Program-made: the position numbers and the translations under genes
From: Magallana gigas
Taxonomy: Eukaryota
Reading direction: 5' to 3'
Length of the DNA stretch: 64,000 bases
Assembly (NCBI RefSeq): GCF_963853765.1
Contig: NC_088854.1
Coordinates: 41,230,001 to 41,294,000 of the forward strand
In this document: positions 34,146-54,900 of the stretch, piece after piece
How positions within the stretch are numbered: the first letter of the stretch is position 1
Layout: each line of letters starts with the position of its first letter
The notes under the pieces: model-generated
What the model was told of the DNA's origin: nothing
Databases searched by the model: none
The model's input: the letters and a program-made list of their open reading frames with translations, nothing else

Positions 34146-37100
34146 TTTCCCCACGCATGTTGCAAATTGTATCATGCAGAAAATGTAGAGATACTGATGC
34201 GTATGATACATTTACACCATTTAATACATCTACTTATAGATATAGAACTGTCGTTGGAGTACATCTCCTGCCAAAAAAAACTGCCACCAAATCACAATAT
34301 ACATGTAGTTATATGTGTGTGGATGGCATTTAACAAATTAATCAATTTACTTGCAGAAAATAATACTATAAACACGTTTATCAATACTCTAATACCTCAC
34401 AGACTATATCGTTGATTTTTTTTTTCATTTTTGAGGTGTTTTTTAATTAATTTGGTTAGAATTTTCTTCTGGGGATCTGCACAGCGCAACAACCAAACTT
34501 AGCATAAACGAAAAAATAATAGTATATTTTAACCCAAGTGTTATTTTTTAATATAGAGAAGCATGCAGTTTAGTGTGAATCATTACATGCATGCAGACTA
34601 GAACTATTTCTCCTGACATTTCCCTTTATGATCCCCCCCCCCCCCCAAGTCTGAGCTTAAAAGGACCGAAGTTGTCTTTCTTTGTTTAATATGCTCTGTA
34701 TTTCATTTCATGATTTCTACGCCCATACTTTCTTATTGTCTTTTTACGCCGACGGACTCTTTAATATCAATATTTTTTATTAATCCGTAGACCCATCCTT
34801 TTAATCACTTTTCAAACGCACTATTCATTTATATCGACACTTCAAGTTCGTATATTTTAGCGCTTCCGCTTATTGGCAATATACTTTCAACATCCTGACA
34901 AACCAATTTAACTGATATTGGACGGTGTCCAACTTCCTGTTTTACACACAAGTACAAGATATGGTTTCTTCCTGAATTATAATAACATCATATCATTATT
35001 TCAGAAACTGAATTCAATTTTGGGTTTTATTATATGATGAAAATGAACTTGATTAATATATTATATGTATATTTTTTATGCATCGCGGGAGTTCACTGGC
35101 GGTAATCATTCATTAATTTTTTCCCGAAATGAATCTATTTATATTTTGATATAAGACGAAAACGCAGTTTTATATTCCACTTAAATAGTCATTTACGCCT
35201 CAATTCAGTATGCCGTATACAGAATCTACTTTTATTTTGAATATTATGGATTTTTTTTTTAATTGTTGATCATGAATTTTTTATATCGGTTGAGGATCAT
35301 TCCATATGTTTGGTTTATTCTGTAAAAATATTGTGAAATAAAGAGCTGTCCTTTGCCAATCATTCAAACAAATAATAATATTTACTTTTAAGAATATACA
35401 TTTTAAAATTGTTATTACAATTTGAATATATTGTAACTTCATTCCACAATGAAATCTCAAACTTTCCCATAATACGGGACCTTTAATCGCTTGAAAATTT
35501 GATTTTTTTATAATTAGATAAACATTAAATGTTTATTTATTTTATTTTCAACTAGGATAATTTGCCAATTGAGTTGGTGTACCAAAACAGGAGCCGGACC
35601 TTTCGATCTAGAATCTTTTCCACCGTAAATTGCATCAAAATGATCTCTTTTTTACTTTTTTAAATCAAACCCAACTCTTCTCTAACATAAAATTTGATCA
35701 ATATGCAATGAATTCCAAGAAACAGCTCATTATCATGCAAACATTTAGATACCAGATGTCTTAGTATCTGTAGATTCTAATGATTGCTAGATGTGTTCAA
35801 TTTCTTGGTCCATTTGTCGTTTGAATATTAAACATTAGGCACCCTTGTTATGTGTCAACATCAATCATTTTTATGGCTAATGTTTGAAACTATGTATTTA
35901 TCTCCGAGGTGGCCTGAACAGTGAGAAATAAATTGTCATTGGTCACACATAGGAGAGACATTGTCAATAGCAAGAGATGGCCACATTCTGGAATTGCTGT
36001 ACAAAAACCCCTCTTCTTTGCAAACATTTTGATATTGATATGCGAATGCTCAACTGTTGAGAAGGCACATATACAAAAGATCTCTCTCGCATGTTAAATG
36101 CTGATAGGGCCCTTGGATTTTGAATGCAGTAATTATCTTTTCTTTGTTAAACCAAAAACTGTATCAGTTTAAGATAGCAATCAAACGTTTAAATCCTTGG
36201 GCTGGTTTATGTGAATGTGACACTTTTGTTGGTGGTGGATGTGCACCGGTACAAGTATAACGAAATACCCGGTATGTTACAACTAGACCAGTGGGTCATC
36301 TCAGACTTATAGGAAGCACGAATTCTACGATCGGAAGGCGTCCAACGGTAGGTTTATCTATCATAAACTTCTTAGATTAGAACTGTTCTGTCATAAGTAT
36401 ATCTGAAGAAAAAAATACCAAAATAGCTTACCATATGATATAAGTATACTTAAGTATACTTCAATGATAGACAGAAAATTTGAAATCCGAAAAATTGCAA
36501 AATCTGAATTTGTAACACATTTACAGTTAAGAATATTTTTTTTTATTATTTTAAGGATCATGATAGGTTAATCCAAAAAATTAGAGACAAAATTTAATGA
36601 ATTTAATTAAATCAAGGTGTGCGTTTATTGGTATACGGTGTATAATGGAGGTTTTATGTACAGTAGAGAATAAAGTGTATAAAACTGCATTCTCAAATCA
36701 TGGGAAACTATACATCTCAAGGACAGACCGTGTTAACAAGATCAATCAACTCATTGTTCTAATCAGTATCTGGTGTCCTCATCTTTATTCGAACTGTGAA
36801 TACCGATCCCGATATGATCTCCAAATTTGCGGTAGAGTTTCTGGTCGTCATTCAAAAATACTCCTAAAAGGAAAAAAACCGGTATATATTTTAGCTTTGA
36901 AATTTGTTTTGTAAGAAGTATTTTGTTTGTGTGCAAACTTTGTAAATTATACAAATAAAGTCTACTAGATTTGTTTGAAAAAAGAAAATGTAAAAAATCC
37001 ATTCTTTCTGTAAGTATACATAAAGAGGTGGGTTCTTTAACATTATATTTAAAATTTTAAAGAGAAATTCATTTGAATTAACGTTTGGTATTATTCAACA

Positions 37101-40100
37101 CTTAAAATTACAAGCGTGATCATGATTATGATAACTTTAAAGTTGGCCACCAATATGTTCTAATAAAATGACTATGATTGTTAAGAGACGATACATACAA
37201 ACAAAACATGAAACCATTTTCGGAATTGTCAATTTTGCAACGCAGATGGTACATGTGTGTATTTGAGATAAATACCTCCATAATAAATGATGTTGTAATA
37301 TGTAGAGAATTGGTTAAAATTTCCCCTCCTTTTATCTAAATATAAAATTAAATCATCCGTATCCAACCAAGTTTAAATTTAATCTTAAAATAATTAATGA
37401 TGATTTTTTTAACACATACGGTAGTGTGTAAATTTGAGAGTTAGGAGGAGAACGACAAGGATAGAGAGAGAGAGCGAGTTCAACCTCTATACTAAAACAA
37501 ACTCGGTTTTTATTTTCTCTATACACGTAACTATGTGCAAACTGGTCTGAACAGTTTCAGTGAAAGTGCACTCATTGTCTACAATTACGTCATTTAGATC
37601 AGGTGCATTAAATGGAATATGTCATTTATTGAAACATTTAAAAGCAAACATCCGAAGCGCGCGTGATAGCAAGAGTTCTTTACTCCAAGTTCGATTAATA
37701 CATGCAGTTCATATTGTCTAATTAAAGGAAACTGTATTGAACCACATTCACAAGTACATAAAAAGAACAAATGTGTGGTAAACTAGAGCCCATTTTACAT
37801 TTGCGTCTATATATATATTTTTTATTTTTAGAATCTGATTTTAGACCCCTTATTCTACTTTAACGGACTAGTTTCATATAGCATTTTGACATTCTGCTAA
37901 TTTTTTCTTGTGATATATACCAATTAAAAGTCAATCATCAATTTAAAAAAATCAATTTAAAAAAGGGCTTTTGAGAAAAATATTTTTAATGCAAATGAAA
38001 AATATCTGTCATTTATACAGTACTCTTGAAATATTTTAAGGCTGTAAGATTAATTTAATTAATCAACAGCCACAGCATGTCAAAGAAAACAATCGATATT
38101 TAAGAATGAGCAAATTGATCAATTATACACCTTTTTATCGATTTTCATTTTTAGTTCGCATTCAACCTCGAACGTTAGGCTTGCATTCATAATTAGGCAT
38201 TTCTTTTTAAGTGCTCAGCGGGTGGCCCCCCTTGTCAGCGGGCGCGAAGTTAGGGATTTTTTTTTCTAATGCATTATAACAATATCTTATCGATGTCTCT
38301 AAAGCTCCTGTCCGTCGGCAGGGTAAGGTTCAAATTCAAACATTTTTATTTCTCACATGCCTGTAATTTAGGTCAGACACTCGTGGTTGACCCAATTTCG
38401 ATTAATTTTTGCTGTGCGTGCCGTTCGTGTTAATGGACTTGATGGTTTCTTTAATCTCTTTTAATAATACCTCCGACACAGGCCCATGTACAATGTACAT
38501 GTTGAGGGCAAGGTCGGTTAAGGCATTGTTATGGGTCTTCATACATTAACATGTATATAATTAGGTTGTGGAACGTATTTATTAAGCTCTATTACCAAAT
38601 ATGAATGTTTTTAAAAATTGTATAGAATTGAAAATTTTGGGGTGTTTTTAATATGCATCGCGTTATTTTCAGTAGTTATATTTTCCATTAGGAATATCTC
38701 ATAAATCGATAAATAGGTTTTTTTCAGTTTCCATTACATACATGTACATACAACATTTTTCTTGAAACGTTTGAGAATGTTAGATTGCACCAAATTGGGC
38801 TAAGACAAAAAACAACGAAAGAGGCTTAGTTTAAAGAGTTGCCCAATGAAGTATTTTGTAAAGGTTTATAACTAAATACAGGAAAGTTGATTTTTTTTTA
38901 AATCTGTTAATGCAAGACAAATAATCTAAAAATAAGGATTTAGAATTACCGATGGCTAAATTGTCTTGAAAAAGTCATCAAACCTTAAGGTTACTGGCAT
39001 TATCCCTTAGGTCAATTACATTGTCAAATATTTTCAAGCTCTCCAGCTGACAAAAAGAATAGTAAAATCAAACACTCTAGTGAAAGTATTTCGAAAAGTT
39101 TATACTTTGGAATGTCAAGTGGATTTGACTTCAGGTAATATGAGTGGAGATCCGAGCAATTGTTTAAACCCAAACAGGTTAGATGAAGTATTTAGACTAT
39201 TGATCAGTGTTGTTTTAAGTTGTTATGCAAACATTTAATAACTTTTTAAGTTAGGAATTTTCGAGAAAAAACATTTGTTTTCAAAACACAGAAGAACTTC
39301 AACTGTGTATACATTTTTTTTTGTTGGTTATGAGTAATTACAGTGGATATAATACTTGTTTTATTCCTCAGTAGCCACAAAATTCAATAACAATACACAA
39401 CTAGGTCGATTCGCGAGGATACGACGTACGAATGATAATTAATTATTGATATATGTATATATATTAAATCACTTAGCTTATAGGATATTTGAGATACAAT
39501 TGATATTGTTTGATTGCGAGGAAAAGTGAGAGAGAAAGAGAGAGAGAAACAAATCATGCGTCAATGGAAATCCATTAGGCCCATATATCTCATTCAAAAC
39601 TCAGGAAAGGGCCGGGGACACTCCGCACACTGTGCTTTATAACATTGCCAAAAGGAAACAACGCGGTTCTAATGTGTTTGTAATCTTTTGACAAACAACT
39701 ACTCCCTTTTCCCCATTCATAATCTTACAGGGATGAAATTGATCGATGACACGAAAGTTACATGTAGAGATACTGTAAATCTTTAAATTCGTTTATTTGA
39801 TTCTCACAAATTCCCATAAAATCCCATTCTATTTATTCTTCCGTGTGTTGAATGTCGTCTGGTCATTTTAAATGACGTCATAACCAACACAGGCTCTGAC
39901 AAGCCGTCGTGATGGTTGTTTTTTTCCCCTATTGAATTGCCATTTAAATTTCATCAAATTGAATTAGAGACACTATTTTATATGTTGTAACCTATTATTG
40001 AATGAAAGGTTTAAAAGAGTTAAATTACGTTTTTCACACCTGTAAGGTATTAAACATCAAATTGTTTGTGCACAGTTTTAAAAGCACTAAATCCACTTCC

Positions 40101-40270
40101 AAAAGGCAAAACCATCACGCAATCTCAGACAATGCGATCTATTAAGTATTACTCTTATATTGAATAATATTGAAAAAGGAAAGGTAACTTTAAAGGGTGG
40201 GGTGGAAGAAATATTTACCTAGGAAACTTCTTGGATGATATATTGCGTGAAAAGATTGTTTGTCTTTAAA

Positions 40271-40410
40271 NNNNNNNNNNNNNNNNNNNNNNNNNNNNNN
40301 NNNNNNNNNNNNNNNNNNNNNNNNNNNNNNNNNNNNNNNNNNNNNNNNNNNNNNNNNNNNNNNNNNNNNNNNNNNNNNNNNNNNNNNNNNNNNNNNNNNN
40401 NNNNNNNNNN
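40271..40410. other. Assembly gap (140 N)
   Basis: Run of N. Confidence 1.
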
Positions 40411-42302
40411 TATCTAACAAACAAATAGGTAGCTGACAATTTGAGAAAACTTTTTTTTTAAAATTCAATGCTTATATAAACCATCAAACTCAAAGACAGG
40501 CATTTCTTTATGATCACAAATCAATGCTCACCGTTTGTTGACATTCTGATATTGCTAAGCTGACAGAAACTTTTGAAGTTGGAAGTTTATGTCTCAACTT
40601 AATCAAAAAGTCGATCGGGATAAGCCGAAAATTACGTATACAACCGAGAGATTTGGGTAGTTTTATAGTATTATTCTTGCAGTCTGCCAGTTACATGTAA
40701 ACGTATTCTGCTATCATTTGTGAAATTGTTCCCAGGGATTTTGTTGTTTCGACTTTTCTTCACAAGGTACATATGGTTACTGATTTTTAATTTGTCATTG
40801 CAAACTGGCTTTCAATTCTTTTTATTCTAGAACTATTTTATCATTGTAAATGTACATTAACCGTGATAAATGGCAAAAGTCATTTCGATTATTACTTTCA
40901 TTCAAAGTTTTTCCCATTGTGAAGTTCATTCAGCTAATCGACATCAGAACAACACAGAAATTCGTGGCCAGCGATTGGGGATTGCATTTCCATATTCATA
41001 TTCCATATTCAATGTTTCATTCATAAACAGAATTGGTTTTCTTGGTTGTGTGAATCAATTATTCCATTGAGGACAAAAACTGTGTCTAAAAGCACTTCAT
41101 TGACTGGTGAATTCTTATTAAGAACATCTTTAATTAACAATTGATTTACTTTAGAAATTAAATCTATTTAGTCAGCCGTAGATTATTACCAATTGACAGT
41201 GATGCTGTGTTTTGATATTCCGATGTATTTACTGTAACCAATAGTTATCCGGTCATTTGAAAAATTGAATCTATTACGGTATTTAGGCTGACCCATGGCG
41301 ATATCTCTCAGATTCAGTCACACCTTTTTATCTTATATAAAGAATGTACATATATTTATCCATGTAACTTCAAATCCCCAAGTGGAAAACCAAGCGTGAA
41401 TCATTTCATGGTATATGGAGATAAGCTTGATGACTCCCCAGATTATTAAGATTTTTAAATCACTTGTTCGTCATTTTTAAATATCTTAGTAAATTGCCTA
41501 TATTTATCGACATAATGTCATAGAAAAATCCCCAATGTAAATATAAATATTCACGGCGAATTTACTCAATTAACCTTTCCTGGTCGCAATAATATAACTA
41601 ACTAATCTGCTTCTAGAAATTTTTAGAGACTTTTCAAACAAGTACCATGATAAAAAAAAATTAATTCTATTTATACCGAGAAATTCTAAAAATAACTATT
41701 TACATGTATATGAATATCATTAATGATAAGGCAAATACTAGTCTATTATTTCAAATACAATTCATAAAGATTTCAATTCTTAAATGTCAATATGAAAAAA
41801 TACGTAAGGTAACAACTTCATTGATTTTTTTTATGTCAATAAGGAAAAAAACATAAGGTGACAACTTCATTGATTTCCGGAAAGATGTTTTTTTGTTTTT
41901 CTTGGAGACAGTTTCCTTCCGAAGAGTCCTATCGATAAGTACCGAGGCCTACTTCTACAAGTCCTAATTATTTACGTCTATAAATAAAAAATAGCGGTCA
42001 ATATAAAAAAAAAATCAAGAATGTAAAAAGCCGTTTAATCCTTTCTTTTTGACAGAATAGTACATTATCTTAAGTTGATTTATTGATTTCAGATTCAAAT
42101 ATTTGAATTAGTTTCTCCCTTTTTATACCGTGCTGCTGAGCGCCACAATAGTTAGAGTAAACAAACATGAAGTAAAATTAGATCTGAAGACTTTCCTGTG
42201 GTTAGTTAGATATTTGTCGCGTGTAATCGGCATTTTATTTGTTTTTGTAGTTAACACAATAAAATTGCATGCAAGGAAAAGTTCTCTTCGACCCTAGACG
42301 CA

Positions 42303-43244
42303 ATGGATATCATCCCCTTTCCCCGTGCTCTTTCTCAATGTGAGTTTGGTTTCAACGAGTCCACTGCAATACCCCCTGTGTTTGAAAAAAGGAAAAGGCC
42401 ATCACCGATTCGCAGACAATTTACTGTAGCTTTGCCATGGCCCCCTAAAAAAGAGGAACAACAGAAACAAAAATTTCTTCCCGACATCAACCCAACTGTT
42501 CAACATTCAGAGAAAAATAAGAAATCAGATTTTCTTTTATCAAAACAGAGGACGGGTATAGATGTACCTGTTACTGCTACCAAAAAGCATCGTTCCCCGA
42601 AATCTATGACAAGCTTATACGGATTAAAAGCCGACTCCAATGACGTCACGGCAATTACCCGGACCTTCCAACCTTTGAATGACAAGAAAAATTTAAATAC
42701 CTCAATCGATCGATTAGAGTTCAAAGCCATTCAACGAAACGACGGTACACATATAAAAGGCGAGACCCGGCCAGATCAGGCAATACACACTTTGATACCG
42801 ACCGAGAGAAGAGGTCCTTTAAACCACAACACAGGAAAACATTTCCGAGTCGTCACAATACTGTACAATACGATGGCATCTCTGAAACTGGACAACAGGC
42901 AGGAGCTAGCTTCTAATGACCACGCCAGGCACCACAACAAGAGGCAGCAGCAGTGGATACGTAGCGAACAAGTCAAAAATTGGAGAAGATCCACCGTGAA
43001 TAGAGTCTCCAAGAAGACCGGTTATACCAGTGGAAGTTCCTCTGGACAAAAATCAGACGTGATCAGCGGAAACTCGGACGATACCATCCACACAACCTCA
43101 TCCAACGAGGAGAGCAACAATGTCTTCGAATATCCCATGGACGCTGAAAAGAAAGAAAGTTTCGACAAATGTCTGAAATGGATGGAGACTTTACCGCAGA
43201 AATTTTCTGGAATGCACATTTTTACCCCCTGTGTTAGTGACTGA
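42303..43244 (+). CDS. Uncharacterised 313-aa, mostly low-complexity protein with conserved ELAxNDH and C-terminal DxCxxWxxxLPxKFSxxH motifs
   Basis: A 942-nt ORF in AT-rich DNA with good start context (GCAATGG). Its C-terminal 123 aa align in two blocks with the ORF at 51638. A candidate upstream acceptor TTTTATTTGTTTTTGTAG lies near 42250. Confidence 0.8.
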   Translation: MDIIPFPRALSQCEFGFNESTAIPPVFEKRKRPSPIRRQFTVALPWPPKKEEQQKQKFLPDINPTVQHSEKNKKSDFLLSKQRTGIDVPVTATKKHRSPKSMTSLYGLKADSNDVTAITRTFQPLNDKKNLNTSIDRLEFKAIQRNDGTHIKGETRPDQAIHTLIPTERRGPLNHNTGKHFRVVTILYNTMASLKLDNRQELASNDHARHHNKRQQQWIRSEQVKNWRRSTVNRVSKKTGYTSGSSSGQKSDVISGNSDDTIHTTSSNEESNNVFEYPMDAEKKESFDKCLKWMETLPQKFSGMHIFTPCVSD

Positions 43245-45662
43245 CATTTTCATTGAGGGGGATATTTAGTATAGCCGAATTTCCAAAAAAAAACAACGGT
43301 GCTTGGTGAAGCAACCATAAACCCGCGCGGACAAAGAATTCCGAGCCCGAGAATCAGCAGGTCTGATCCAGAAAAACAGAGGTATGGGCTTCCATGTCTA
43401 TCTTCGACAAGAGTGCCTACTCCTGCCAAAAAAGCAAGAACGGTGCTAACCCAGTTCATCAAAACATCGCCACCCGTTTTAACAACTGTTATTCGAGAAG
43501 AAAAACAGATCGACCAATTGTACCTATGAGAGAATCAAAAGCGAACATTTGCGAACGTTATAGCTTGATAATATTGAAGAAGAAAATACGTCAAGTGAAC
43601 TTTTGGTGATCATCATAAACATTTACCATTTTTGTTCCTATTTATCATGAAGTGTACGCACATTTCCAATGTGATTTTATTCGGTAATTTTTAGACTGCA
43701 GGGACGAATATACGTGTACATTGTATCCGTGATACTAGTCATACCAAGATGGTGACCGAGGACGCTTATATCATTCCATTGTTAGAATCATCCTCAATGT
43801 GCCAAAACAGAATCAAATTATTTATTTTATTTGTTGTATCTTATCGTTTTCTAATTTATGAACTGTTAATCTGAACGTTTCAAAAGATAAATCTTCACAA
43901 TTGTGTAGATTTAAAATTAGAATACTAAGTATCGCCGGTGCCAATTTGAAACTTGTTATCAAATTCCAAGTATATTTACAGTTTATGTGCCCGGTATTCT
44001 ACATAAATATTTCACTTGTCTATCTGTGATAAAATTTTCGAGACTAACTAAGTGATAAGATTGAAAGTCTTTGATTTTCCCCTGACTCTGTTCCAATATT
44101 CTACCCAGATTGCTTTTAACAACAATGTTCTACTTCAATTCCTTCTGTGATAAAAGATGTTATATATGTTGATTTGATTGTTAAGTGAAATAAATGTTAT
44201 ATACGTTTCAATAGAGTTTGTGTTATCGTTTGGGAAAAGTCGATTTGAATAGAAGCTTTTGAGATGTGGCCTTGTATCGGGTCTGTAAAAGCATTGAACG
44301 GAGATTGTTTAGGAAGAATTACTTAAGACGTCCAATGCAAAAAGCCTTATCGCTAAAATGACATGAATTCCCTATATAATAATTTGAGGAGTTGAGCTGA
44401 AAAACGGTTCAAAGTAAATCGGAATGTTCAAAGTTAATAATTACCCGAGAGTAAAAGGTATCCAGTAATTTATTTCAAATTTTGGAAGAACCCATTTTTG
44501 TTGGCATTGACTGCCGCTATTTGAATTTAATGACTCTGCGACAAATCTTCCTGTCAATTTCGAGGTCGGGAAAAGTTTAATGTATGTGAATTATTACAGT
44601 AATGATAAAGCAATCTTTTTTTTTTTAATGTAAAAAAAAGAATTATCTCCGCTCCAAGTATATACAGACTATTATTTCTACAATTTTTTATTCTGAAAAA
44701 TGTTTATGTTAAAGATATATATGTCGTTAAAGAATGCCGCAGTATTTATAAAGAATTTTAACAATGCGTACATGTATATTGGAAAAAACTTCTGGTTTGA
44801 GCCTAACAAACTTGCAAAAAGCTACATTTTTAATAATATACAGGTACAAGCTTAAAATCACTTATTGGTTATTAGCATATTTTTCTTTTAAATTTGGTCT
44901 TCTTTTAAATTCGGTTAACGTTAAAACAAATTTTAACTGGTCTTTAAAAGTATCATTTTCACGTATAATTACATATATTTGAATATTTCAGTCCTCGATT
45001 TGTCATACAATTCTCTTGCATTTCTTTTTTAAAAAACCTTGGAATTGAGGGAATGTGTTCAAATTTCTTCACACGAACCACCACTTTAAATGCTCGCTAT
45101 TGAGGGGGTAGATTGGTTGGTATTCGTTGTATTTATTTAGATAGTATTAGAACGTTCGAGCTGTTTAGAACATTTAAGTCGCCAATCAAATATTGTTAGT
45201 TCTCTTTATTCAAACCTCGGGCTACTTCTGTGTATTCGGTTGTCCTAGTGTAGGAATTCTGCATTTGTTGATTTTAATATATGTTGCTCAAAAATCTGCG
45301 TATTCTTTTTTAAAACAAATCATCTTGGGGGCGCTAACAAGTGGTATGTCAAGTTATTTGCCGAAACGATACTTTAAAAAAACATTCGAATGATTTAATT
45401 TTCTTAATTTTCTATCAACTTGCTCTTTGATGCTTCTATATTGAAATGCAGGCCTGGCATTGCCGAGAACAGCAAACTGTATAACTCCTACGTGCATGTG
45501 GAATGGCCGCTTGACATATATTCTTTTAATTACCCAATCCCAAACCTCACTCCCCCCTTTTCAGATTCACATGTCTTTACACATAACCAAATTTAAAGCT
45601 GGAAGTACCTATACATCATGATTATTTATAATATATCAAGCCCCGGCGGGGGCGGAGGTGTG

Positions 45663-45666
<4 letters not shown>

Positions 45667-45751
<85 letters not shown>
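45667..45751. repeat. (CT)n microsatellite
   Basis: Uninterrupted CT run. Confidence 0.95.
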
Positions 45752-45755
<4 letters not shown>

Positions 45756-48240
45756 TTTCCAGTATTCAGCATGGAGATTTTTAATATTGCTTCGTAAATC
45801 AAACATTATAATGCAACGATGTACGTATATTAATTGTTTCATGTTAGTTTTAAAAAGAGATTGTTTCAGACCGAACGAGTATCCTTTGTTTGTTTGATTA
45901 AAAAGAAAAAGAAATCGGATGTTGTGAACAGTGCCTTAAATGCTGAATGGGCTGCAGCAATCATTATTACTCCTACATCGTAGATTCAGGTGAAACCACT
46001 AAACAATTAAGTCATTATTACACCTTTTCAATCAATCTGAGAAAATGGTTTTGACAAGAAATCGACATGATTGCCGCTCTCCCGCGACGAGTCTTGCTAA
46101 AACAAACGCATAAAGCTTCGATTTATATTCGATTTGGACTCCCGATAAAATTCAAGTCAATTAAGTTTACAGGAGAGAAAATTAGTTCGATGTATGAATA
46201 CAAAATGATAATGACATACATTGTTTTTGTTTTGTGTTTTAATTGTTTTGCTTTTTTACTAAATCAGTTTTGAAGTGTTTTCTATGTAGATTGACGTTCG
46301 GTTAATTTAAGGTTTTAAAAATAATAACCGCGATACTTTTAAACATGTACTCGAAAACGATGTATTATCCTGCCAGAAAAAGAATGTATTAAGATTTTAA
46401 ATTAAAAACTTATATTATTTCACAGCATTCCCAATTCCCACCCCCATAATACTAGCATATCGTTCTTAAAACAAAAGGTAATTTGACACCCGGTTTTATC
46501 ATTTACAATTATTACCAAATTGGCAAAGCAGACGACAGCACGAACCAGTGGGAGCAATATTCAAATCAAAAGATATAATTTAGAACTTGAGGAGCAGGTG
46601 CCCGCTCGTTTCTTTCATCTGTGGAATGAGATTTGCACGTTTGTGTCAATAAAACTTGAATATGTAGTCCAGCGGTATCGCTTTTGCTTATGCATGCTGT
46701 CACTACCCAACGTCGAATCTTCTCTATTTGTCTTTGAATGCGAAGAATACTTGCTTCATACGAACTGTCTCCTAGACTTAATTACTCTTCTTTCCTTTTG
46801 TTGGGATATCTCATGCATATGCTCTTCAAAGACAGCTCCAGCAAATTTATTTGATTAGAAAGCAAACAGACCCCGGAGTTTGTTCCTTAAATGTTCGTTT
46901 CTTTTCTGTTTTTTAATAAATGAAACCTGGATATTTTGAAGTACTGTACAATCGAAGATTTATGCAAGCGATAGATAAAGAAATTCAAAGACAAAATTGA
47001 CATGTCTTGACTGTAAAACAATAAAGGTTACGTTTTTGTTCAAATATGAGAAAAGAAAATTGTCACAGGAATTTAACCCTTCCTTTGAAAATTTAGGTTT
47101 AACACGACCGCGTTTTTAAATCTTAGGTTTATTAATATAAGTGGCAAATGGTCGTGCTAAGTCATTAACTTGCAGGCTAATAAACTCTATCCATTAGTCA
47201 TCCGTATTAGGTTAAGCAATACCTACTTAATACTTATATGTAACATAGTGACACACTTTTATTGAGGTTAGGTTAAAAAGTGTACATGTAAATGGTAAAG
47301 TCTCCCAAACTCAAAACACTTTAAACGGTGTTTTATCTTCTGGGAAAACAGTTTGAGGACATTGCTGTGAGAAAAGCCAACAGATCCGAATTCTTGGTTT
47401 TGTTGCTCATTGTTGATAGCTCTTTTGTCCTATCATCTCTTGGGAGGCTTTCAAAAGATTTGTGTACACACTAGGTCCTCTTGAACGCCTTCTTTGCTCT
47501 TCCTACAATAGGTTCGCCTGATATTGTCAATTTAGGAACATGTCTTTCCCTTCAGATTTAAGTCGATTTTCCTCATTCAAATCTCCGGTGTCAACAGAAG
47601 TGAATCGGCATACTACCGCGGGCTTCTCCTTATCTTGGATCCAATTTTAAGGTCAATACTTATTTCATCTCTATATGGGTTGGTGCAATGTCTTGAAAAG
47701 GTGTTAAGTAAACTCGCATGGCTATATATAGATGGTTGGTAAGCACTGAGGATATTCTGTCGATCGACCATTACGTCGATGGGTCAACAAAGCCGGACAG
47801 GGTCAAGAATATAGGGAAAACGTTAGCTCCTGTGGGTCAACATGAGAGGCTTGGTGCTTAAATATAAACTATTTTATTTGACTAACTTATTAGTTTAGTT
47901 AAGAGGTTCATTAGGTTGAATGCCACTTTATAGACCAAACGTGATCAACGGGATGGTGAAAACAGAGTGAACAACCTTAATTACCAATAACACAACGCCT
48001 CTGCACAACACCCTAAGTATTACACTTACATTGTAATTGATTGTAAATAAATTTGTTTATTAAAAAAATGTTGGTTTTGATCGATGGAACCACCTTGTAC
48101 CAGCATAAGTAACAATTAGGTGTGTCACGGATCGAAAGTGTACCAAACCGATTCCTTCATAGATAACCATAATAATAAAAATAATCTAGCTGCAATAAAA
48201 TGTTTCAATATTAACCTATATCTATTTTAAATTCACCTTT

Positions 48241-48398
48241 AAAGGTAATCATTTAAACATTATTTTCTGCTATTTGCATCCTTATTTTTTTTTTCAAAAC
48301 TTCGTAAATAATTCTAAAGGTAATCATTTAAACATTATTTTCTGGTACAATGTCTTTGCATCCTTATTTTTTTTTTCCAAAACTTCGTAAACAATTTT
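48241..48398. repeat. Two-unit tandem duplication (76-82 bp)
   Basis: AAAGGTAATCATTTAAACATTATTTTCTG starts at 48241 and 48317. Confidence 0.85.
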
Positions 48399-50604
48399 AA
48401 TTAATCGATAGAGGGGAAAATCGTTTACGCAACGATTTCTTCCGGTACAAATGAACTTCATAAAATATTTTTACGATGTACGAGGACTTCGTAGTTCAGG
48501 GCAAGTCCAGTGCGTTTAGGAGGAGGAGATTAAACCCACCCAGCTGGTGTGCGTGCCTTCTCTCCAAATCTGTCGACCGCGATACTTGACCATAGTCTCC
48601 ATGAATTATAACGCAAGGATAAGAGAGATCAAGAGAGCCACCCTGGCTTAATAACCCATAGTTCTTTACCACCCGCCGCTACAGAACTCGTAAGCCTAAC
48701 GCACCCAGAAATCCTGTTCTCTTATCACGGTTTTATTTGTTTGGGGGGACATTTTTTCCCCCTCTCCCGTCCCATTATTTTCTATTTTCCGGGTAAGAAA
48801 TCAATATACATGCTCTTTAACAACAAAAGAAACGTAAAAAAAAAGCAATCTCTCTGTGAAAGCTCAAGGTCGTAAGAGATGTTTTTTTTCTATTTTAGTG
48901 ACAACACAGGTATTTTCTGTTTGTATACAATGCTTGGAAATTTGTCTAGAGAGTGAAATTTGAATACACAGAATTTTTTAAATCGTAAATATTTAGGAGA
49001 AAGAGAAGTTGGAGAAATCTGAGCCACTTAATTACCAGAACCCAGCTGAGATTCAATTCAATGAGCTCTATGTGATTTATTCAATCAAAAGATTATCTAG
49101 TAGGAATAATGCATTAAGGGATCTAAACAAGGATGTTTTTATTAAACCAAAGAGCCCAAAAATTCTGCAATTTGATTGGTCGTTCAAAAATGCACCATAC
49201 AGTTGAAAGTCATTCCTTTAAATACGAGGTTAATAAATTTACCTGTATCTTGCACCGTGCACTCTCTGTTACCCAATCATATATTTACCTTTATTTGGTT
49301 ACAGATTTCAGGGTTTCCGATATACGACTAATTGTCATGGAACGGTGGAAGGTGGAAGTTGATGTCGCGATGCTTTCAGACCTGATGCCATATCTATAAT
49401 TACATGAAACTAGAGGATCGTAAAGTCTGCAAAATTTCAATATTGTTTACAAGATTGGCTAAACCACATTCAATAAACCAAGCATTCATAATTCAGAAAT
49501 TGCCCTGTCGATAGCACTTCAACATTTATCAAGTCGGGGAATTACACGAAAGTGTAGTTGGAAGAAAGACGCGAATTTTGGACTGGAATCTGTCGAGTAT
49601 TTAATTAAAAGGTCTTTAGTAGAATAGCAATAACATTGGGGCTTTTTTGTAGGCTATCTGAAACAGTTAATTCTCCAAATCCACTGTAGTATCGTTCTAT
49701 GGACGTTCTCCGTCGCCTTAAGAGAACCCTTTATTACAACTTGGTAATATAATTGTGTAGAATTTTCTCCATACTTCAAAAGTAATCGGTCGTCAAATGC
49801 TGGTTAACCTCTTCAGAGTCCGCCAACCAAAGTTCTTGGAAGTTTGAAGTTCCTTGTACAAAAAAAACAAAAACAAAACTTAAAATCCTGATTTTATAGA
49901 ATACACATGCACGTAAATTCGGTACACGTGTATTCAACGTGTTCTGTAAAAATTAAAAAATGGAACGATTTGATTAAAAAACTTTCCAAGTTCATAAAAC
50001 ATCTTTCTGTATATGCCTAATTATTATTCTAATTCATAATGTTTTTGATTTGGCATTTCATGGTTGTACATGGATTTTGTGTTCATAGGTATATAATGTA
50101 ATTCAGCAAACAGTTGACCTTATCGTCAAAATAATCCGCATACACATTCATAAAAATATTTTATCATTAAATCTCTGGCAAGACATACTTTAAAAACATC
50201 TGATGGCTTCAAAAATCAAAGCATATACTTTAATTTCAAGGTCGTTCCGGAGATTTTTAAAAATGTATGCTACTTTTTGTAGATGTTTATCTTTGATGAT
50301 TCAATACGTACCCTATCAAATCTCAATGCCAAATTGTGTACTCTAAATCGTGTCCCCTTTAATTAAGCAACCCTTGGCTAATTGTTATGATAGATATCCT
50401 GTCTGTAAGACAGACTAAATAGTTGAAATAATCAGATGATTCAGATTGCAAAATAAAATCAATGCCAAAAGGGGAATTTATTTTTCATATTACTGTATTA
50501 TAATATTCGAATCGCTTCATCCTAAGTTCAGTAATATTGGTGAATGATAGCTGTGTTTCTGTTAACATTTTACTAGTATTTACCAAATTACCAAAGTGCA
50601 GTGA

Positions 50605-50750
50605 NNNNNNNNNNNNNNNNNNNNNNNNNNNNNNNNNNNNNNNNNNNNNNNNNNNNNNNNNNNNNNNNNNNNNNNNNNNNNNNNNNNNNNNNNNNNNNNN
50701 NNNNNNNNNNNNNNNNNNNNNNNNNNNNNNNNNNNNNNNNNNNNNNNNNN
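50605..50750. other. Assembly gap (146 N)
   Basis: Run of N. Confidence 1.
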
Positions 50751-51404
50751 TCAGAATGAATGACTTTTTAAAAAAATCCCACTTTTACGTCATCTGTTTC
50801 AGAAAAACAAATAAAATCAAATCATTCAAATAATACCAGTATTCCAAACACATACGCACACGCGCGCATATATATGATATTACATTCAAACTGCTTCAAT
50901 GATTACTTAAATGAAAAATTTACAATTGACAATAACTGCAATTTAATGATTAATGATAAGTAATTTTCAGGCGCATATAACGAATTTAGATGGAACAATC
51001 CCGATTTTTTAAAGATCTAATTTCAGCACGAAAAATATTTTCAAAATTGGTATGAAGTAAACACATTATAAACAAACATGTTTTAAAAATTCATTTTTTA
51101 CCCTCTCAGGAGATAAATATTTATTTCATATACACGCCCTACGTGACGGTTATAATGACTTTAAATGAACAATCGAACAAACTGGAACGCATCCGAATTG
51201 ATTCAACCAATGTTACCGTCTAATTGAATCAGTCAACAGAAGTATAGATACATAGCGTACCTTTGTTAATTTTTTTTGTTGTTTTGATAGCCCGTGAAGT
51301 GAGGCACCCTATCTTTACAATCTAGACAAAACCATTTAATACGTCACAAACATATACTTTCGGCTTAAAAAGGTATGCGGGATTGTCGGAGATTCAATAT
51401 TGAT

Positions 51405-51460
51405 TGATTGGCCGGGGGTATATTTAATCCTACCTGTGGTATATATACTGACTTTTAGTG
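51405..51460 (+). promoter_or_regulatory. Candidate core promoter of the 99-aa gene
   Basis: Reverse CCAAT (ATTGG, 51407-51411), TATTTAA at 51421, a TATATATA run at about 51440 and an initiator-like TTAGT at about 51455. Confidence 0.35.
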
Positions 51461-51637
51461 CAACACCGTCAGAAAAACCAAGGTGCTATCCAGGGTAACA
51501 TGTTGATAGGAAAAGTTATCAAAGTCTGTGCACCTATAGCTGGAAGTATTATCGTTGAAGTCTGAAGACGAAAACTCAGTAAAAAAGAAAGAAAAAGGAA
51601 GTTTAAGCAGTGTGAATATAACACTACGATCTGAAAT

Positions 51638-51937
51638 ATGACAACTTTGAAGATTTACAACGGTGCAGAACTGGCTGCAAATGACCATGTGGAACATTTT
51701 AAAATGACCAGACAACAGTTCTCGCCCAAGAAACGTTTAACGGGACAGCTAAGTTCGTCAAGTGACAAAAGCAGCGGAAGCTGCGCATTTAGCTCTGGAC
51801 AAGAGAGCAAGACGTCTTCCTCCGATAACTTGAACGGAAGTGAGAGTATGTGTTCTTTAGACCGAGATACCATGGACAGATGCATGCAATGGTTAAAAGG
51901 TCTGCCTACAAAGTTCTCTGCTATTCATGTGCAATGA
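51638..51937 (+). CDS. 99-aa Ser-rich small protein, paralog of the C-terminal part of the 42303 ORF
   Basis: MTTLKIYNGAELAANDHVEH vs MASLKLDNRQELASNDHARH (11/20 identical); DRCMQWLKGLPTKFSAIHV vs DKCLKWMETLPQKFSGMHI (9/19 identical). AATAAA at 52112-52117. Confidence 0.75.
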   Translation: MTTLKIYNGAELAANDHVEHFKMTRQQFSPKKRLTGQLSSSSDKSSGSCAFSSGQESKTSSSDNLNGSESMCSLDRDTMDRCMQWLKGLPTKFSAIHVQ

Positions 51938-54900
51938 ACACCTGCTTCAGAGAACTGTTGCAATAATGTGTCAAATCAACATTTTTGCCATACTTAACTC
52001 AGGCTATTTCATTTATTTTCATTCGGGAGAAATGCAATATTTGTATTTTTTCTTCGTATCGTATCTAAAATCTTGAATGGAGATTTCAGTTTTTATATTG
52101 ATGTTTTATACATTTATTCGCAATAAATTGTCTATGCCTTATTTTCCTTCTTTTGAGTTTTTGAAATGGCTATAACAGAGATACTATTTATCTCTCGTTG
52201 ATTGAAATTATTCCTCCCAGTTATTTGTTATGTCGACAGCCAATTTTATATATCTGGTTTTAGATATATTTTGCAAATCGAATGTAATTTCAGGTGCACA
52301 GGCTCCAAGAAATTGATCGTCTTTTCAAATATTGCAGTAAAAGTCTAGTAATTAAATATGCATATCAAATTATAACAAGAACATTGGAACTGATATGTGT
52401 CGAATTGGATTTTAACAAGAGGTTCGTTTTTAATGCCTTTCTAGAAAGTCACCGGTAATCAAGATTTCTTAATATAAAAACCAAGTATAAACATTTTATC
52501 AAATTCAGGTATTCGTTGATAATATTCTGTATGGAAGCTTTCTCAATCGTCCCTAGTATGTCGTATGTCAAAACAAATGAATTGAAATCCTTAGAACGGA
52601 GGCAACATATTGGTTTGTATTATGTCTGTAAGAAGAGCATGTCATGTAATAATCTTTTTCGGCCCTCTAACATGCTCTAATATTGAGAAGTGCTTTAAAA
52701 AAATGGCGCAAACCCATTTACTCTAATAAAGCGATATAGGCCTATTAATTACAAGTATAGGGTCTTTTAATTTATATATTTAATATGATTTGAGTTAATC
52801 AGAACTTTCACCTACATCTAATAGTGAATAATTGGTACATAATTGTGTAATCCAGTTAGATCTGGGTTGTGTTACTGGGTGAAAAAGGATTACTGGACGG
52901 ATTAGGATATCACCATAAAAAAGGAAAGAGAAGGGCTTAGACACCCAGCCACATACTTAAGGGTTGCACAGCATTTTTACCTGTCATGTTGATTGAGCAG
53001 TACTCGAGTGCAGGAAGAGAAAAATGCAAGAAACGATACTCAAAATGGACCGTAGCACGGAGTATCGTTTTTGTATCAAACATTTCTTGCTTTCGATAGG
53101 CGATCCCCCTAATTTATTTGTCATGGCGAATACTTGTCCACTATTTTGGGATCAAAGATCTAATTGTGTTTGTAGATATAAGAACTTCTGCAAACGAATT
53201 CGATTCAATTTAGAATAAAATCTAGATAATATTTTTTTGAAGTGTTTAATTTTTATATTTACTTCCAGCGAGTAAATTTAAAACCAAATAGGAACCTACC
53301 TATATGTGTGCATAATAGGTACAGGCCGTTGAAGGATGTTCCAAATTTGTCGACTTTATAACCGAATTATAATTGGATTGATCTCGACGATCAATTCGTC
53401 AAGTTTATTTTTGATAGATATTTAAAGCAACGAGAAAGTAATTATCCCCTCCATTTTAAGCCATTGTGATGGATGACAGCAAAGTATAGAGGAAAGAACT
53501 AAATCGGGATGGGCCCACCGTGCTTCATTCAGAAACTATACCCATCGAACAATGCCAAACTAATTCCCTGGATAAACGCAACACAAACACATTCAATTAA
53601 CAACTATCAATCCATAAGTAAAAGTTTAGGAGTTATTAGATGAGAGATTGATATATCTGATGACAAATCCACTTTCAACGAGCTGGCAAGCCATACTCAT
53701 TCAAAATACAATGGAAAATGGAGAGCGGAAAGAGATGAAATTTCATGCTTTCACAGAAAAGAAAGTACAAAAAATGATTGCTTTATTATTTTGATAATAG
53801 CTTTATGTCAAATGACAGGACACCAATGGACAAAAAAATGTACATTATTGGCATAAATAAAAAACAATTTAAAACTCTATTCTATCAGTAAATGAATCTT
53901 GATCCCGACCACAGAGAGACACGCTGCCGGTTGCACGTAACTTTGAACTTTATAACTGTGAAGGGCACCCTGTATTGTCCTCAGCGTGTAACAAACATAC
54001 ACACAGTGTCATAAATAATATCAATTGGTTAGTATCAAAAAATTTAACAGGGCAATGCAACATATTGAAGAGGCAGTAAACTTCCGAAAATATTTGTTTG
54101 CGATTCGTCCATAGCGTACAATGTACTGATAAATCCCGCTATCCTTGATCTTTTTGGCAAGGTTCGATCTTGCATGCTCGATCTCTGGCATTTCTCGTGT
54201 CTGCCCTTTTGATAGGTTTACATGTATACGTAACATGAGTGCCTTGTTTATCTGTTTTGTATATGGGTTCTATTTCTTCCTTTATTCGTTTGTCCTTGGC
54301 ATGGGAAGACCCGTATTTGGGATGAATGTCATTCTGATGTACATTTGGAATGCTTGCTTGCAATACATTCTAAAATGCATGTGACATATTCCTTGTGGGA
54401 TGAAAATATTTAAGTAAAATATGATTCATGTACATCTATTCCTAAATGTGCGTGTATCCATTTGGCAAACAACTGGAAGTAGAAAATGTGAATAAACAAA
54501 CATTCAATCTGAAGGAAATAAAAGATGCTGGCATACCCGATAAATATTGCTTTCAAGAGTTACCATTTTTAAAACTTCATACAGTTATTGTGTGAGTTAT
54601 AAAGGATTTGGGATTGCAATAACTCTGTTCCTTTGAGTTTTATTTGACAAAGCATTTTTTTTTCTTTGATTTAGAAAGGAAACTTCGAGTTAGCCACTCG
54701 ACACAACAGACACTTTTCAATTCAATTCTTTATTTCTTTAAGCTTTACAGCTTATCAGTATGACATATGTATAACATGAGGTGGTAGTGTATTTACAGGA
54801 GAACTTCTGCACGTACAGATAATAACATTTACTGTTACATATACAGGTTGAGAAAACAAAAGACTACAATTATGTAATACAGTTGTCCCTTAATAACATA

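What the first reader, a model, noticed from the sequence alone, without database searches (positions are those of the whole stretch)
42303..51937. Unnamed two-motif protein family: a 313-aa ORF and a 99-aa ORF 8.4 kb apart
Seen: two same-strand ORFs with no obvious DNA-level similarity share, in order, M-x-x-L-K-x-x-N-x-x-E-L-A-x-N-D-H-x-x-H (11/20 identical), RQQ, SSGQ(K/E)S in a Ser-rich linker, and a terminal D-x-C-x-x-W-x-x-x-L-P-x-K-F-S-x-x-H (9/19 identical). Conservation confined to two short blocks around a variable-length, likely disordered linker implies old duplication under protein-level selection. Inference: a bipartite docking or inhibitor protein that grips a partner with two short motifs. 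From memory only, the C-x-x-W helix resembles the KCxEWL end of vertebrate PRR18; this is unverified.
Basis: partly seen in the sequence, partly recalled or inferred. Interest (0 to 1): 0.75.

Follow-up and report, generated by a model that had tools for sequence, protein, structure and literature searches.

The report
Mollusc-only disordered two-helix protein pair
Two neighbouring oyster genes encode real, transcribed, selectively constrained members of an unnamed mollusc-wide family of small, mostly disordered proteins with an invariant C-terminal KCxxW...LPxKFS motif; their function is unknown and the suspected link to vertebrate PRR18 is only a borderline 15-residue resemblance.

Summary
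ORF-A (42303-43244, 313 aa) and ORF-B (51638-51937, 99 aa) share the stated motifs: BLASTP E 1e-12, and a Smith-Waterman score 19 SD above shuffles. The assembly gap (50605-50750) lies between the genes and touches neither ORF nor transcript.

Both are genes. ORF-A sits in a spliced mRNA with a canonical GT-AG intron. ORF-B has a TATA box, an AATAAA signal and polyA RNA reads confined to it. dN/dS is 0.06-0.24 for B, 0.02 for the shared module of A, and 0.31-0.50 for A's N-terminal 190 aa.

These are the genome's only two copies. An exhaustive profile search found 34 relatives. Every one that carries a species name is a bivalve or gastropod, and all are 'uncharacterized'. No Pfam family reaches its threshold.

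AlphaFold gives two helices around a disordered Ser-rich linker. Only KCxxWxxxLPxKF is invariant across molluscs.

The PRR18 idea was tested against real PRR18 sequences. Only the KCxxW helix aligns (hhalign P 0.0015-0.0045, probability 8-17%). The Pfam PRR18 model finds nothing. FAM110 is rejected.

Most likely this is a phospho-regulated linear-motif adaptor that docks through its C-terminal helix and peptide. That mechanism is inferred, not shown. Interest is moderate.

The parts
36277..36347 (+). ORF-A gene, non-coding 5' exon (at least this much of it)
   Evidence: Bases 1-71 of RNA-derived contig L009 map here and then join to 42250/42251. The donor is CCAACG|GTAGGT.
36348..42250 (+). 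Intron of the ORF-A gene (GT...AG; contains the N run 40271-40410)
   Evidence: Splice junction in L009, with a polypyrimidine tract and AG acceptor.
42251..44210 (+). ORF-A gene, exon 2. It carries the whole coding sequence and the 3' UTR. AATAAA lies at 44189-44194, and the 3' end given here is approximate.
   Evidence: L009 is colinear with the window to 44180. The polyA signal is at 44189. An in-frame stop lies upstream of the ATG in the mRNA.
42303..43244 (+). ORF-A coding sequence, 313 aa. Residues 1-190 are a fast-evolving extension and 191-313 are the conserved family module.
   Evidence: dN/dS is 0.31-0.50 for the N part and 0.02 for the module.
42873..42977 (+). ORF-A N motif / helix 1 (aa 191-225, starting MASLKLDNRQELASNDHARHH). 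It begins at an internal Met that is invariant in all long forms.
   Evidence: Invariant columns in A1 and A2. AF2 gives a helix at module residues 9-35.
43035..43106 (+). ORF-A Ser/Asp-rich motif (aa 245-268, SSSGQKSDVISGNSDD...), a candidate multi-site phosphorylation patch
   Evidence: Invariant from oysters to mussels. Gastropods carry a related K(R/K)SDSxxN(D/E)S. Phosphorylation is inferred.
43155..43220 (+). ORF-A C motif (aa 285-306, ESFDKCLKWMETLPQKFSGMHI): helix 2 plus an extended peptide
   Evidence: K-C-x-x-W-x-x-x-L-P-x-K-F is invariant in 26 mollusc sequences. AF2 gives a helix at module residues 91-105 with pLDDT about 80.
50605..50750 (.). Assembly gap, intergenic; not part of either gene as far as the RNA shows
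   Evidence: Not filled.
51440..51447 (+). TATA-like box of the ORF-B gene (TATATATA), about 35-40 bases before the first RNA fragment end
   Evidence: Sequence. The X3 RNA contig starts at 51483 directly after adapter sequence. PolyA reads begin in bin 51451-51550.
51480..52145 (+). ORF-B transcript, single exon, with approximate ends. AATAAA lies at 52122-52127.
   Evidence: PolyA RNA raw reads from two runs fall only on 51451-52050 of a 3-kb stretch. RNA contigs reach depth 300 or more. No joints were seen. PolyA signal.
51500..51565 (+). 21-codon upstream ORF in the ORF-B 5' UTR, in the same frame and closed by TGA
   Evidence: Gene callers that read TGA as Trp fused it to ORF-B, giving the 165-aa P0001 and P0002.
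51638..51937 (+). ORF-B coding sequence, 99 aa. It corresponds to the family module alone: N motif at aa 1-28, SSGQES at aa 52-57, C motif at aa 77-98.
   Evidence: Orthologues are 70-80% identical. dN/dS is 0.06-0.24.

Best explanation
ORF-A and ORF-B are two tandem paralogous genes of an unnamed family found so far only in molluscs. Both are transcribed and under purifying selection. The family unit is a protein module of about 100-125 residues. It has an N-terminal basic helix, a disordered Ser/Asp-rich stretch, and a C-terminal amphipathic helix running into an extended peptide (KCxxW-xxx-LPxKFSGMH). ORF-A carries an extra, fast-evolving 190-residue N-terminal extension. ORF-B is a strongly diverged copy consisting of the module alone, seen only in oysters so far. 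Inferred mechanism: the protein has no globular fold and acts as a linear-motif adaptor or regulator. The invariant C-terminal helix and peptide would be the main docking element for a conserved cellular partner. The N-terminal helix or basic patch would be a second, lineage-variable contact. The conserved Ser/Asp cluster would be a multi-site phosphorylation switch. Shown here: paralogy, transcription, splicing, constraint, taxonomic spread, the helix-disorder-helix prediction, and the absence of any known domain. Inferred: partner docking, phosphorylation, and the role of each motif.
For: Paralogy: E 1e-12, z = 19. These are the only two copies in the 564-Mb genome. Transcription of A: the spliced contig L009 with a GT-AG intron, an upstream in-frame stop and AATAAA. 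Transcription of B: polyA reads confined to the gene, RNA contigs at depth 300 or more, a TATA box and AATAAA. Constraint: dN/dS 0.02 (A module), 0.31-0.50 (A N part), 0.06-0.24 (B). Spread: 34 hits in 1.84 billion representatives. Named hits come from Saccostrea, Mytilus, Sinanodonta, Nucella, Littorina, Lymnaea, Biomphalaria, Aplysia and Bradybaena, and all are 'uncharacterized'. K-C-x-x-W-x-x-x-L-P-x-K-F is invariant in 26 sequences. AF2 predicts helices at 9-35 and 91-105, with 36-90 below pLDDT 50 and pTM 0.23. The linkers are 33-37% Ser+Thr. No Pfam, PDB or own-genome family match reaches a threshold.
Against: No partner, localisation, modification or phenotype is known, so the docking mechanism rests on architecture alone. 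The N motif is not alignable with confidence outside bivalves, so 'bipartite' may hold only for bivalves. A low AF2 confidence does not prove disorder: a metal-dependent or partner-induced fold would look the same. I obtained no tissue or condition of expression.
Confidence: 0.55

Rival explanations
1. The family is the protostome branch of the vertebrate PRR18 family (Pfam PF15671). It would share a common ancestor and the same C-terminal KCxxW(L/M) helix function, with everything else diverged beyond recognition.
For: Language-model nearest neighbours are the two PRR18 clusters: 0.84 for ORF-B, and 0.92/0.91 with 190-196 shared features for the distant member P0031. hhalign of three mollusc profiles against an alignment of real PRR18 C-termini always picks the KCxxW helix as its top alignment, with P 0.0015, 0.0024 and 0.0045. 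Column-shuffled controls reach that score 1/150, 0/150 and 1/100 times. HMM-to-sequence scores are consistently positive in both directions at 5-11 bits. No other PRR18-like locus exists in the oyster genome. Both families are disordered proteins with a conserved C-terminal helix.
Against: hhalign probability is only 8-17% over 15-17 columns. PF15671 finds no family member at E <= 10 and nothing in the genome. PRR18's strongest motif (SLLNERHRYDDxEYEE) has no counterpart: the alternative alignment gives P 0.64. The mollusc LPxKFSGMH peptide is absent from PRR18. ORF-A itself gave no atlas hit. No T-box or SFT2-type gene lies near the locus, although my memory of the vertebrate PRR18 neighbourhood is unverified. 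The exhaustive profile search returned no vertebrate protein.
Confidence: 0.3
2. The bivalve module is a small metal-clasped fold. The invariant His-x-x-His of the N motif and the invariant Cys and His of the C motif would bind one zinc ion and pull the two helices together, looping out the linker.
For: N15, D16, H17, H20, C100 and H115 are invariant across both paralogue lineages in bivalves. This four-ligand set is split between exactly the two conserved blocks.
Against: Gastropod members lack the NDHxxH block, and some members lack the terminal His (MYI, MDI and MTL variants). AF2 does not pack the helices (pTM 0.23), although AF2 does not model metals. No known zinc-finger family matched.
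Confidence: 0.1
3. The C motif is a remnant of the N-terminal DNA-binding region of a hAT (Hermes-type) transposase that was domesticated.
For: Two Mytilus-type members hit Pfam DBD_Tnp_Hermes below threshold: 14-16 bits against a cut-off of 20.5, E 0.01-0.04, over profile positions 11-32 of 68. The bivalve profile hits Hermes chain 2bw3_B at E 1.3, with the same W-to-FS spacing.
Against: These are chance-level E-values once the number of scans is counted. Only one lineage matches, and the hit disappears with the pan-mollusc profile. The match covers 22 residues only. No BED finger, RNase-H domain or hAT dimerisation domain is present.
Confidence: 0.03
4. The ORFs are chance open frames or untranslated RNAs.
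For: No peptide evidence was available.
Against: z = 19, dN/dS well below 1, orthologues in many species, a spliced and polyadenylated RNA, and 313 open codons in DNA with about 35-39% G+C.
Confidence: 0.01

Closest known systems
Vertebrate PRR18 (proline-rich protein 18, Pfam PF15671); function uncharacterised, seen in the literature search only in gene lists, many from oligodendrocyte or brain studies
   Same: A largely disordered protein whose best-conserved part is C-terminal. It has a K-C-x-(E/x)-W-(L/M) amphipathic helix preceded by an acidic stretch. It is the language-model nearest neighbour. The helix aligns at P of about 0.002-0.005.
   Different: The family scores far below the Pfam threshold or is not detected at all. 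It has no SLLNERHRYDD-EYEE motif and no Pro-rich N-terminal region (ORF-A's N part is 9% Pro). PRR18 lacks LPxKFSGMH, the NDHxxH helix and the KSDxxSGNS cluster.
FAM110 (Pfam FAM110_C, PF14160), centrosome/spindle-associated proteins
   Same: A Ser-rich disordered protein ending in a short conserved helix containing K-W-L. It is the second language-model neighbour.
   Different: The oyster has its own bona fide FAM110 gene on another chromosome (78 bits). hhalign of the family against it gives P 0.57. Not related.
Hermes/hAT transposase DNA-binding domain (Pfam PF10683; PDB 2bw3)
   Same: A 22-residue stretch with the pattern KEAIEKCxxW-(7)-FS in mussel members.
   Different: The match is sub-threshold, restricted to one lineage and lost with the wider profile. 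No other transposase feature is present.
Generic class: small intrinsically disordered regulators that act through short linear motifs, for example kinase or phosphatase inhibitor and scaffold peptides (from general knowledge)
   Same: Small size, helix-disorder-helix architecture, conservation concentrated in short blocks, and a Ser/acidic cluster suited to multi-site phosphorylation.
   Different: No recognised docking motif was matched by any test. The gastropod K/R-R-L-E-x-(hydrophobic)-N-L stretch only fits the loose MAPK D-site pattern by eye, which is an untested inference.

Membership tests
PRR18 (Pfam PF15671) | Score at or above the curated Pfam cut-off (27 bits) against the PRR18 model | tested here: not met
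   No PF15671 hit for ORF-A or ORF-B at E <= 1, nor for 10 + 26 + 9 family members at E <= 10. There is no hit anywhere in the genome. The positive control, a PRR18 C-terminal fragment, scores 149 bits.
PRR18 (Pfam PF15671) | C-terminal KC(T/S)EWLRGVE helix | tested here: inconclusive
   KCxxW(L/M) is present. hhalign gives P 0.0015-0.0045 at probability 8-17%. Shuffles reach the score in 2 of 400 runs. hmmsearch with filters off gives 5-11 bits.
PRR18 (Pfam PF15671) | SLLN(E/D)RHRYDD(V/E)EYEE motif upstream of the helix | tested here: not met
   The motif is invariant in 12 PRR18 sequences. The only alignment to the mollusc N motif scores 9.3, P 0.64.
PRR18 (Pfam PF15671) | Conserved gene neighbourhood with vertebrate PRR18 (TBXT and SFT2D1, recalled from memory) | tested here: not met
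   The nearest T-box hits on the same chromosome are more than 20 Mb away, and Got1/Sft2-type hits are on other chromosomes. This is a weak test at this evolutionary distance.
FAM110 (PF14160 FAM110_C) | Match to the FAM110_C model or to the species' own FAM110 protein | tested here: not met
   PF14160 finds one locus on C7 and not this one. hhalign gives P 0.57.
hAT transposase DNA-binding domain (PF10683) | Score at or above the cut-off (20.5 bits) over the 68-position domain | tested here: not met
   The best scores are 14.1 and 15.7 bits over positions 11-32, in two mussel sequences only. ORF-A, ORF-B and the gastropods show none.
Unnamed mollusc family (defined here) | C-terminal K-C-x-x-W-x-x-x-L-P-x-K-F-S within about 25 residues of the C-terminus, preceded by a Ser-rich low-complexity region | tested here: met
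   ORF-A has it at aa 289-302 (the motif part spans aa 285-306) and ORF-B at aa 81-94 (part aa 77-98). It is invariant in alignment A3. Profile E-values are 4e-63 and 3e-36 in the own-genome search.

The most novel reading that the evidence does not exclude
The KCxxW(L/M) helix marks a bilaterian-wide superfamily that unites the uncharacterised vertebrate PRR18 with this mollusc family. That would give PRR18 its first invertebrate relatives and pinpoint about 15 residues as its ancient functional core, the docking site for a conserved and still unknown partner.
Probability: 0.3. Interest if true: 0.55.

Novelty: new variant of a known kind. Interest (0 to 1): 0.4.

Why it matters
The family is strongly constrained (dN/dS 0.02 in the core) and present across bivalves and gastropods, yet it has no name, no Pfam model and no literature. 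Defining its motifs gives annotators a handle for dozens of 'uncharacterized LOC' genes. It also gives experimenters a precise 20-residue peptide to use as bait. If the PRR18 link holds, it would reduce an uncharacterised vertebrate protein to a testable conserved core. Otherwise this is an ordinary lineage-restricted disordered protein family of unknown role.

Tried and rejected
- FAM110 relationship: rejected.
- Pfam PRR18 membership: not met.
- Search of the oyster genome with a PRR18 C-terminal profile: nothing.
- Synteny with T-box and SFT2-type genes: none.
- PDB sequence search: only chance-level hits, a VirG-like protein, Hermes and a dynein.
- Hermes/hAT lead: sub-threshold and restricted to one lineage.
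- Language-model search with full-length ORF-A: no usable hit.
- Extra paralogues in the genome: none found with a single sequence or a profile. One E = 7 hit on C5 was ignored.
- ORF-B copy next to the Saccostrea ORF-A orthologue: none within +/-10 kb.
- Literature on named mollusc orthologues: none.
- Literature on PRR18 function: the hits came from gene lists and an unrelated use of 'PRR185-200'.
- Fold search was not run, because the model (pLDDT 59) would give meaningless matches.
- The first 47 bases of contig L004 extend into the assembly gap. I neither used nor reported them.
Full report
**Observation**

The window is animal DNA, an oyster chromosome. The closest named orthologue is Saccostrea cucullata LOC134277419 at 64% identity.

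- BLASTP aligns A191-306 with B1-98 at E 1e-12.
- The Smith-Waterman score is 135, against 31.9 +/- 5.3 for 2000 shuffles of ORF-B (z = 19).

The flagged assembly gap (50605-50750) is intergenic. It lies 888 bases upstream of ORF-B's ATG and upstream of all RNA coverage. Continuity across it is therefore irrelevant to both frames, and I did not fill it.

**Are these genes?**

ORF-A:
- The Logan contig L009 joins 36277-36347 directly to 42251 onward. The donor is G|GTAGGT, and the acceptor is a polypyrimidine tract followed by AG.
- The contig then runs colinearly through the whole ORF to 44180, nine bases before an AATAAA.
- An in-frame stop precedes the ATG in the mRNA.
- ORF-A is therefore the complete coding sequence of a two-exon gene.

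ORF-B:
- Raw reads from two polyA RNA-seq data sets fall only on 51451-52050 of a 3-kb stretch.
- RNA contigs of depth 300 or more cover 51170-52430 without joints.
- One RNA fragment begins at 51483, about 35 bases after a TATATATA box (51440-51447).
- An AATAAA lies at 52122.
- ORF-B is a single-exon gene of roughly 0.65 kb. Its 5' UTR contains a 21-codon upstream ORF.

Codon-level constraint is clear:
- dN/dS is 0.06-0.24 for ORF-B against three orthologues.
- It is 0.02 for the shared module of ORF-A.
- It is 0.31-0.50 for ORF-A's N-terminal 190 residues.

**Family**

- These are the only two copies in the 564-Mb genome, by single-sequence and by profile search.
- ORF-B has 99-100-aa orthologues at 70-80% identity.
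- The 165-aa 'proteins' P0001 and P0002 are the same gene miscalled with TGA read as Trp.
- ORF-A has orthologues in other oysters and in mussels, but only the last ~120 residues are conserved.
- That conserved part begins at an internal Met that is invariant in every long form.
- Several bivalve sequences (107-133 aa) start exactly at that Met.

An exhaustive HMM search of 1.84 billion representatives with the module alignment gave 34 hits at E <= 1e-3. Every hit that carries a species name is a mollusc: Sinanodonta, Mytilus, Saccostrea, Nucella, Littorina, Lymnaea, Biomphalaria, Aplysia and Bradybaena. All are labelled hypothetical or uncharacterized. I found no paper that mentions them.

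Across 26 bivalve and gastropod sequences the invariant core is K-C-x-x-W-x-x-x-L-P-x-K-F, usually followed by S-G-M-H-I.

- Gastropods replace the bivalve N motif with a K/R-R-L-E-x-hydrophobic-N-L-R block.
- Gastropods also carry a K(R/K)SDSxxN(D/E)S cluster that corresponds to the bivalve SGQKSDVISGNSD.
- ORF-B's SPKKRL resembles the gastropod block. I read this by eye.

In a maximum-likelihood tree the ORF-B clade (support 100/100) sits on a very long stem inside an unresolved bivalve polytomy. Gastropods form a separate clade with support 100/99. ORF-B is thus a strongly diverged, module-only paralogue, seen so far only in oysters. No ORF-B copy lies within 10 kb of the Saccostrea ORF-A orthologue.

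**Structure**

- AlphaFold2 with the family alignment predicts helices at module residues 9-35 and 91-105. The second has pLDDT about 80.
- Residues 36-90 score below 50, and pTM is 0.23.
- The linkers are 33-37% Ser+Thr.
- No Pfam family reaches its threshold for any member.
- PDB sequence searches give only chance-level hits.

**The PRR18 idea**

A language-model neighbour search put the two PRR18 clusters first:
- for ORF-B, at 0.84, which is a lead only;
- for the distant member P0031, at 0.92 and 0.91 with 190-196 shared features;
- FAM110 came next in both;
- full-length ORF-A gave nothing.

To test this I needed real PRR18 sequences.

2. I checked that Pfam recognises it as PRR18 (E 2e-43, profile positions 190-266 of 266).
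3. I used it only as bait to fetch 14 database proteins carrying PF15671. All tests below use those fetched sequences (alignment A4).

Results:
- hhalign of the bivalve module, the pan-mollusc alignment and a gastropod-only alignment against A4 each returned the KCxxW helix as the top and only meaningful alignment.
- Scores were P 0.0015, 0.0024 and 0.0045, at probability 8-17%, over 12-17 columns.
- Column-shuffled PRR18 alignments reached the observed score in 1/150, 0/150 and 1/100 trials.
- PRR18's most conserved motif, SLLNERHRYDD-EYEE, has no counterpart (P 0.64).
- hmmsearch with filters off gives 5-11 bits in both directions.
- The Pfam PRR18 model and the A4 profile find nothing in the oyster genome.
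- No T-box or SFT2-type gene is nearby. My memory of the vertebrate neighbourhood is unverified.

It does not establish homology, and the family fails every membership criterion of PF15671. I put remote homology at about 0.3.

FAM110 is excluded. The oyster has its own FAM110 gene elsewhere, and the families do not align (P 0.57).

A sub-threshold similarity of mussel members to the Hermes hAT transposase DNA-binding region is restricted to one lineage and vanishes with the wider profile. I treat it as chance.

**Mechanism**

What is shown:
- two expressed, constrained paralogues;
- conservation concentrated in short blocks;
- a predicted helix-disorder-helix layout;
- no globular domain.

What I infer:
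- The protein works as a linear-motif adaptor or regulator.
- The invariant C-terminal helix and the LPxKFSGMH peptide form the main docking element.
- The N helix or basic patch is a second, lineage-variable contact.
- The Ser/Asp cluster is a multi-site phosphorylation switch. A basic residue precedes the first Ser and acidic residues follow the others, a pattern typical of basophilic-primed CK1/CK2-type sites, judged from general knowledge.
- The invariant internal Met191, together with the short bivalve forms, suggests that ORF-A may also yield a module-only isoform. This is untested.

A rival for bivalves is a zinc clasp formed by His17, His20, Cys100 and His115, all invariant in alignment A2. 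Gastropods lack that His pair.

**Verdict**

The finding is real and was correctly observed. It is an unnamed, mollusc-restricted, strongly constrained family of small disordered proteins, present here as a tandem pair. Its function is unknown, and its relation to PRR18 is possible but unproven. Interest is moderate.

Noticed in passing
window 51500-51565: ORF-B's 5' UTR holds a 21-codon upstream ORF (MLIGKV...), in the same frame as ORF-B and closed by TGA. A second in-frame TGA lies two codons before the ATG. Public gene calls that read TGA as Trp fuse everything into a spurious 165-aa protein (P0001, P0002).
   Followed up: partly
window 42873 (ORF-A codon 191): The Met that opens the conserved module is invariant in all long ORF-A-type proteins from oysters and mussels. 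Several bivalve proteins begin exactly there. Seven other ATGs precede it in exon 2 besides the main start, so a module-only isoform would need an internal transcription start or internal initiation.
   Followed up: partly
window 10676-11599 (-), 18840-19952 (-), 28240-29337 (+): Three large ORFs give weak Hsp70 / BadF-type ATPase matches.
   Followed up: partly
window 31321-31941 (-) and 33409-33915 (-): Exon-like ORFs with an immunoglobulin V-set domain (E 1e-4) and a PAN/Apple domain (E 1e-7). They probably belong to one minus-strand gene just upstream of ORF-A's first exon.
   Followed up: no
window 40421-43289: Three Logan contigs (L006-L008) are colinear with the genome across ORF-A's intron-exon boundary and all stop at 43289, 45 bases after the stop codon. 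They could be genomic DNA, unspliced RNA, or a graph break at a polymorphism. I could not tell which.
   Followed up: no
window 45636-45842 (-): A long (GA/TC)n-type microsatellite, read as a run of Glu-Arg repeats in a spurious ORF, lies between the two genes.
   Followed up: no
G000:C2:14.60-14.68 Mb and 20.99-21.09 Mb: Two tandem arrays of T-box-domain exons on the same chromosome. The 21-Mb array has near-identical copies spaced about 18 kb apart.
   Followed up: no
P0028 (540 aa, from the profile search): A protein of unknown origin carries about seven tandem repeats that begin with an ORF-B-like N motif (QTLEIDNSADLAAQD). It lacks the C motif and its relation to the family is unclear.
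   Followed up: no
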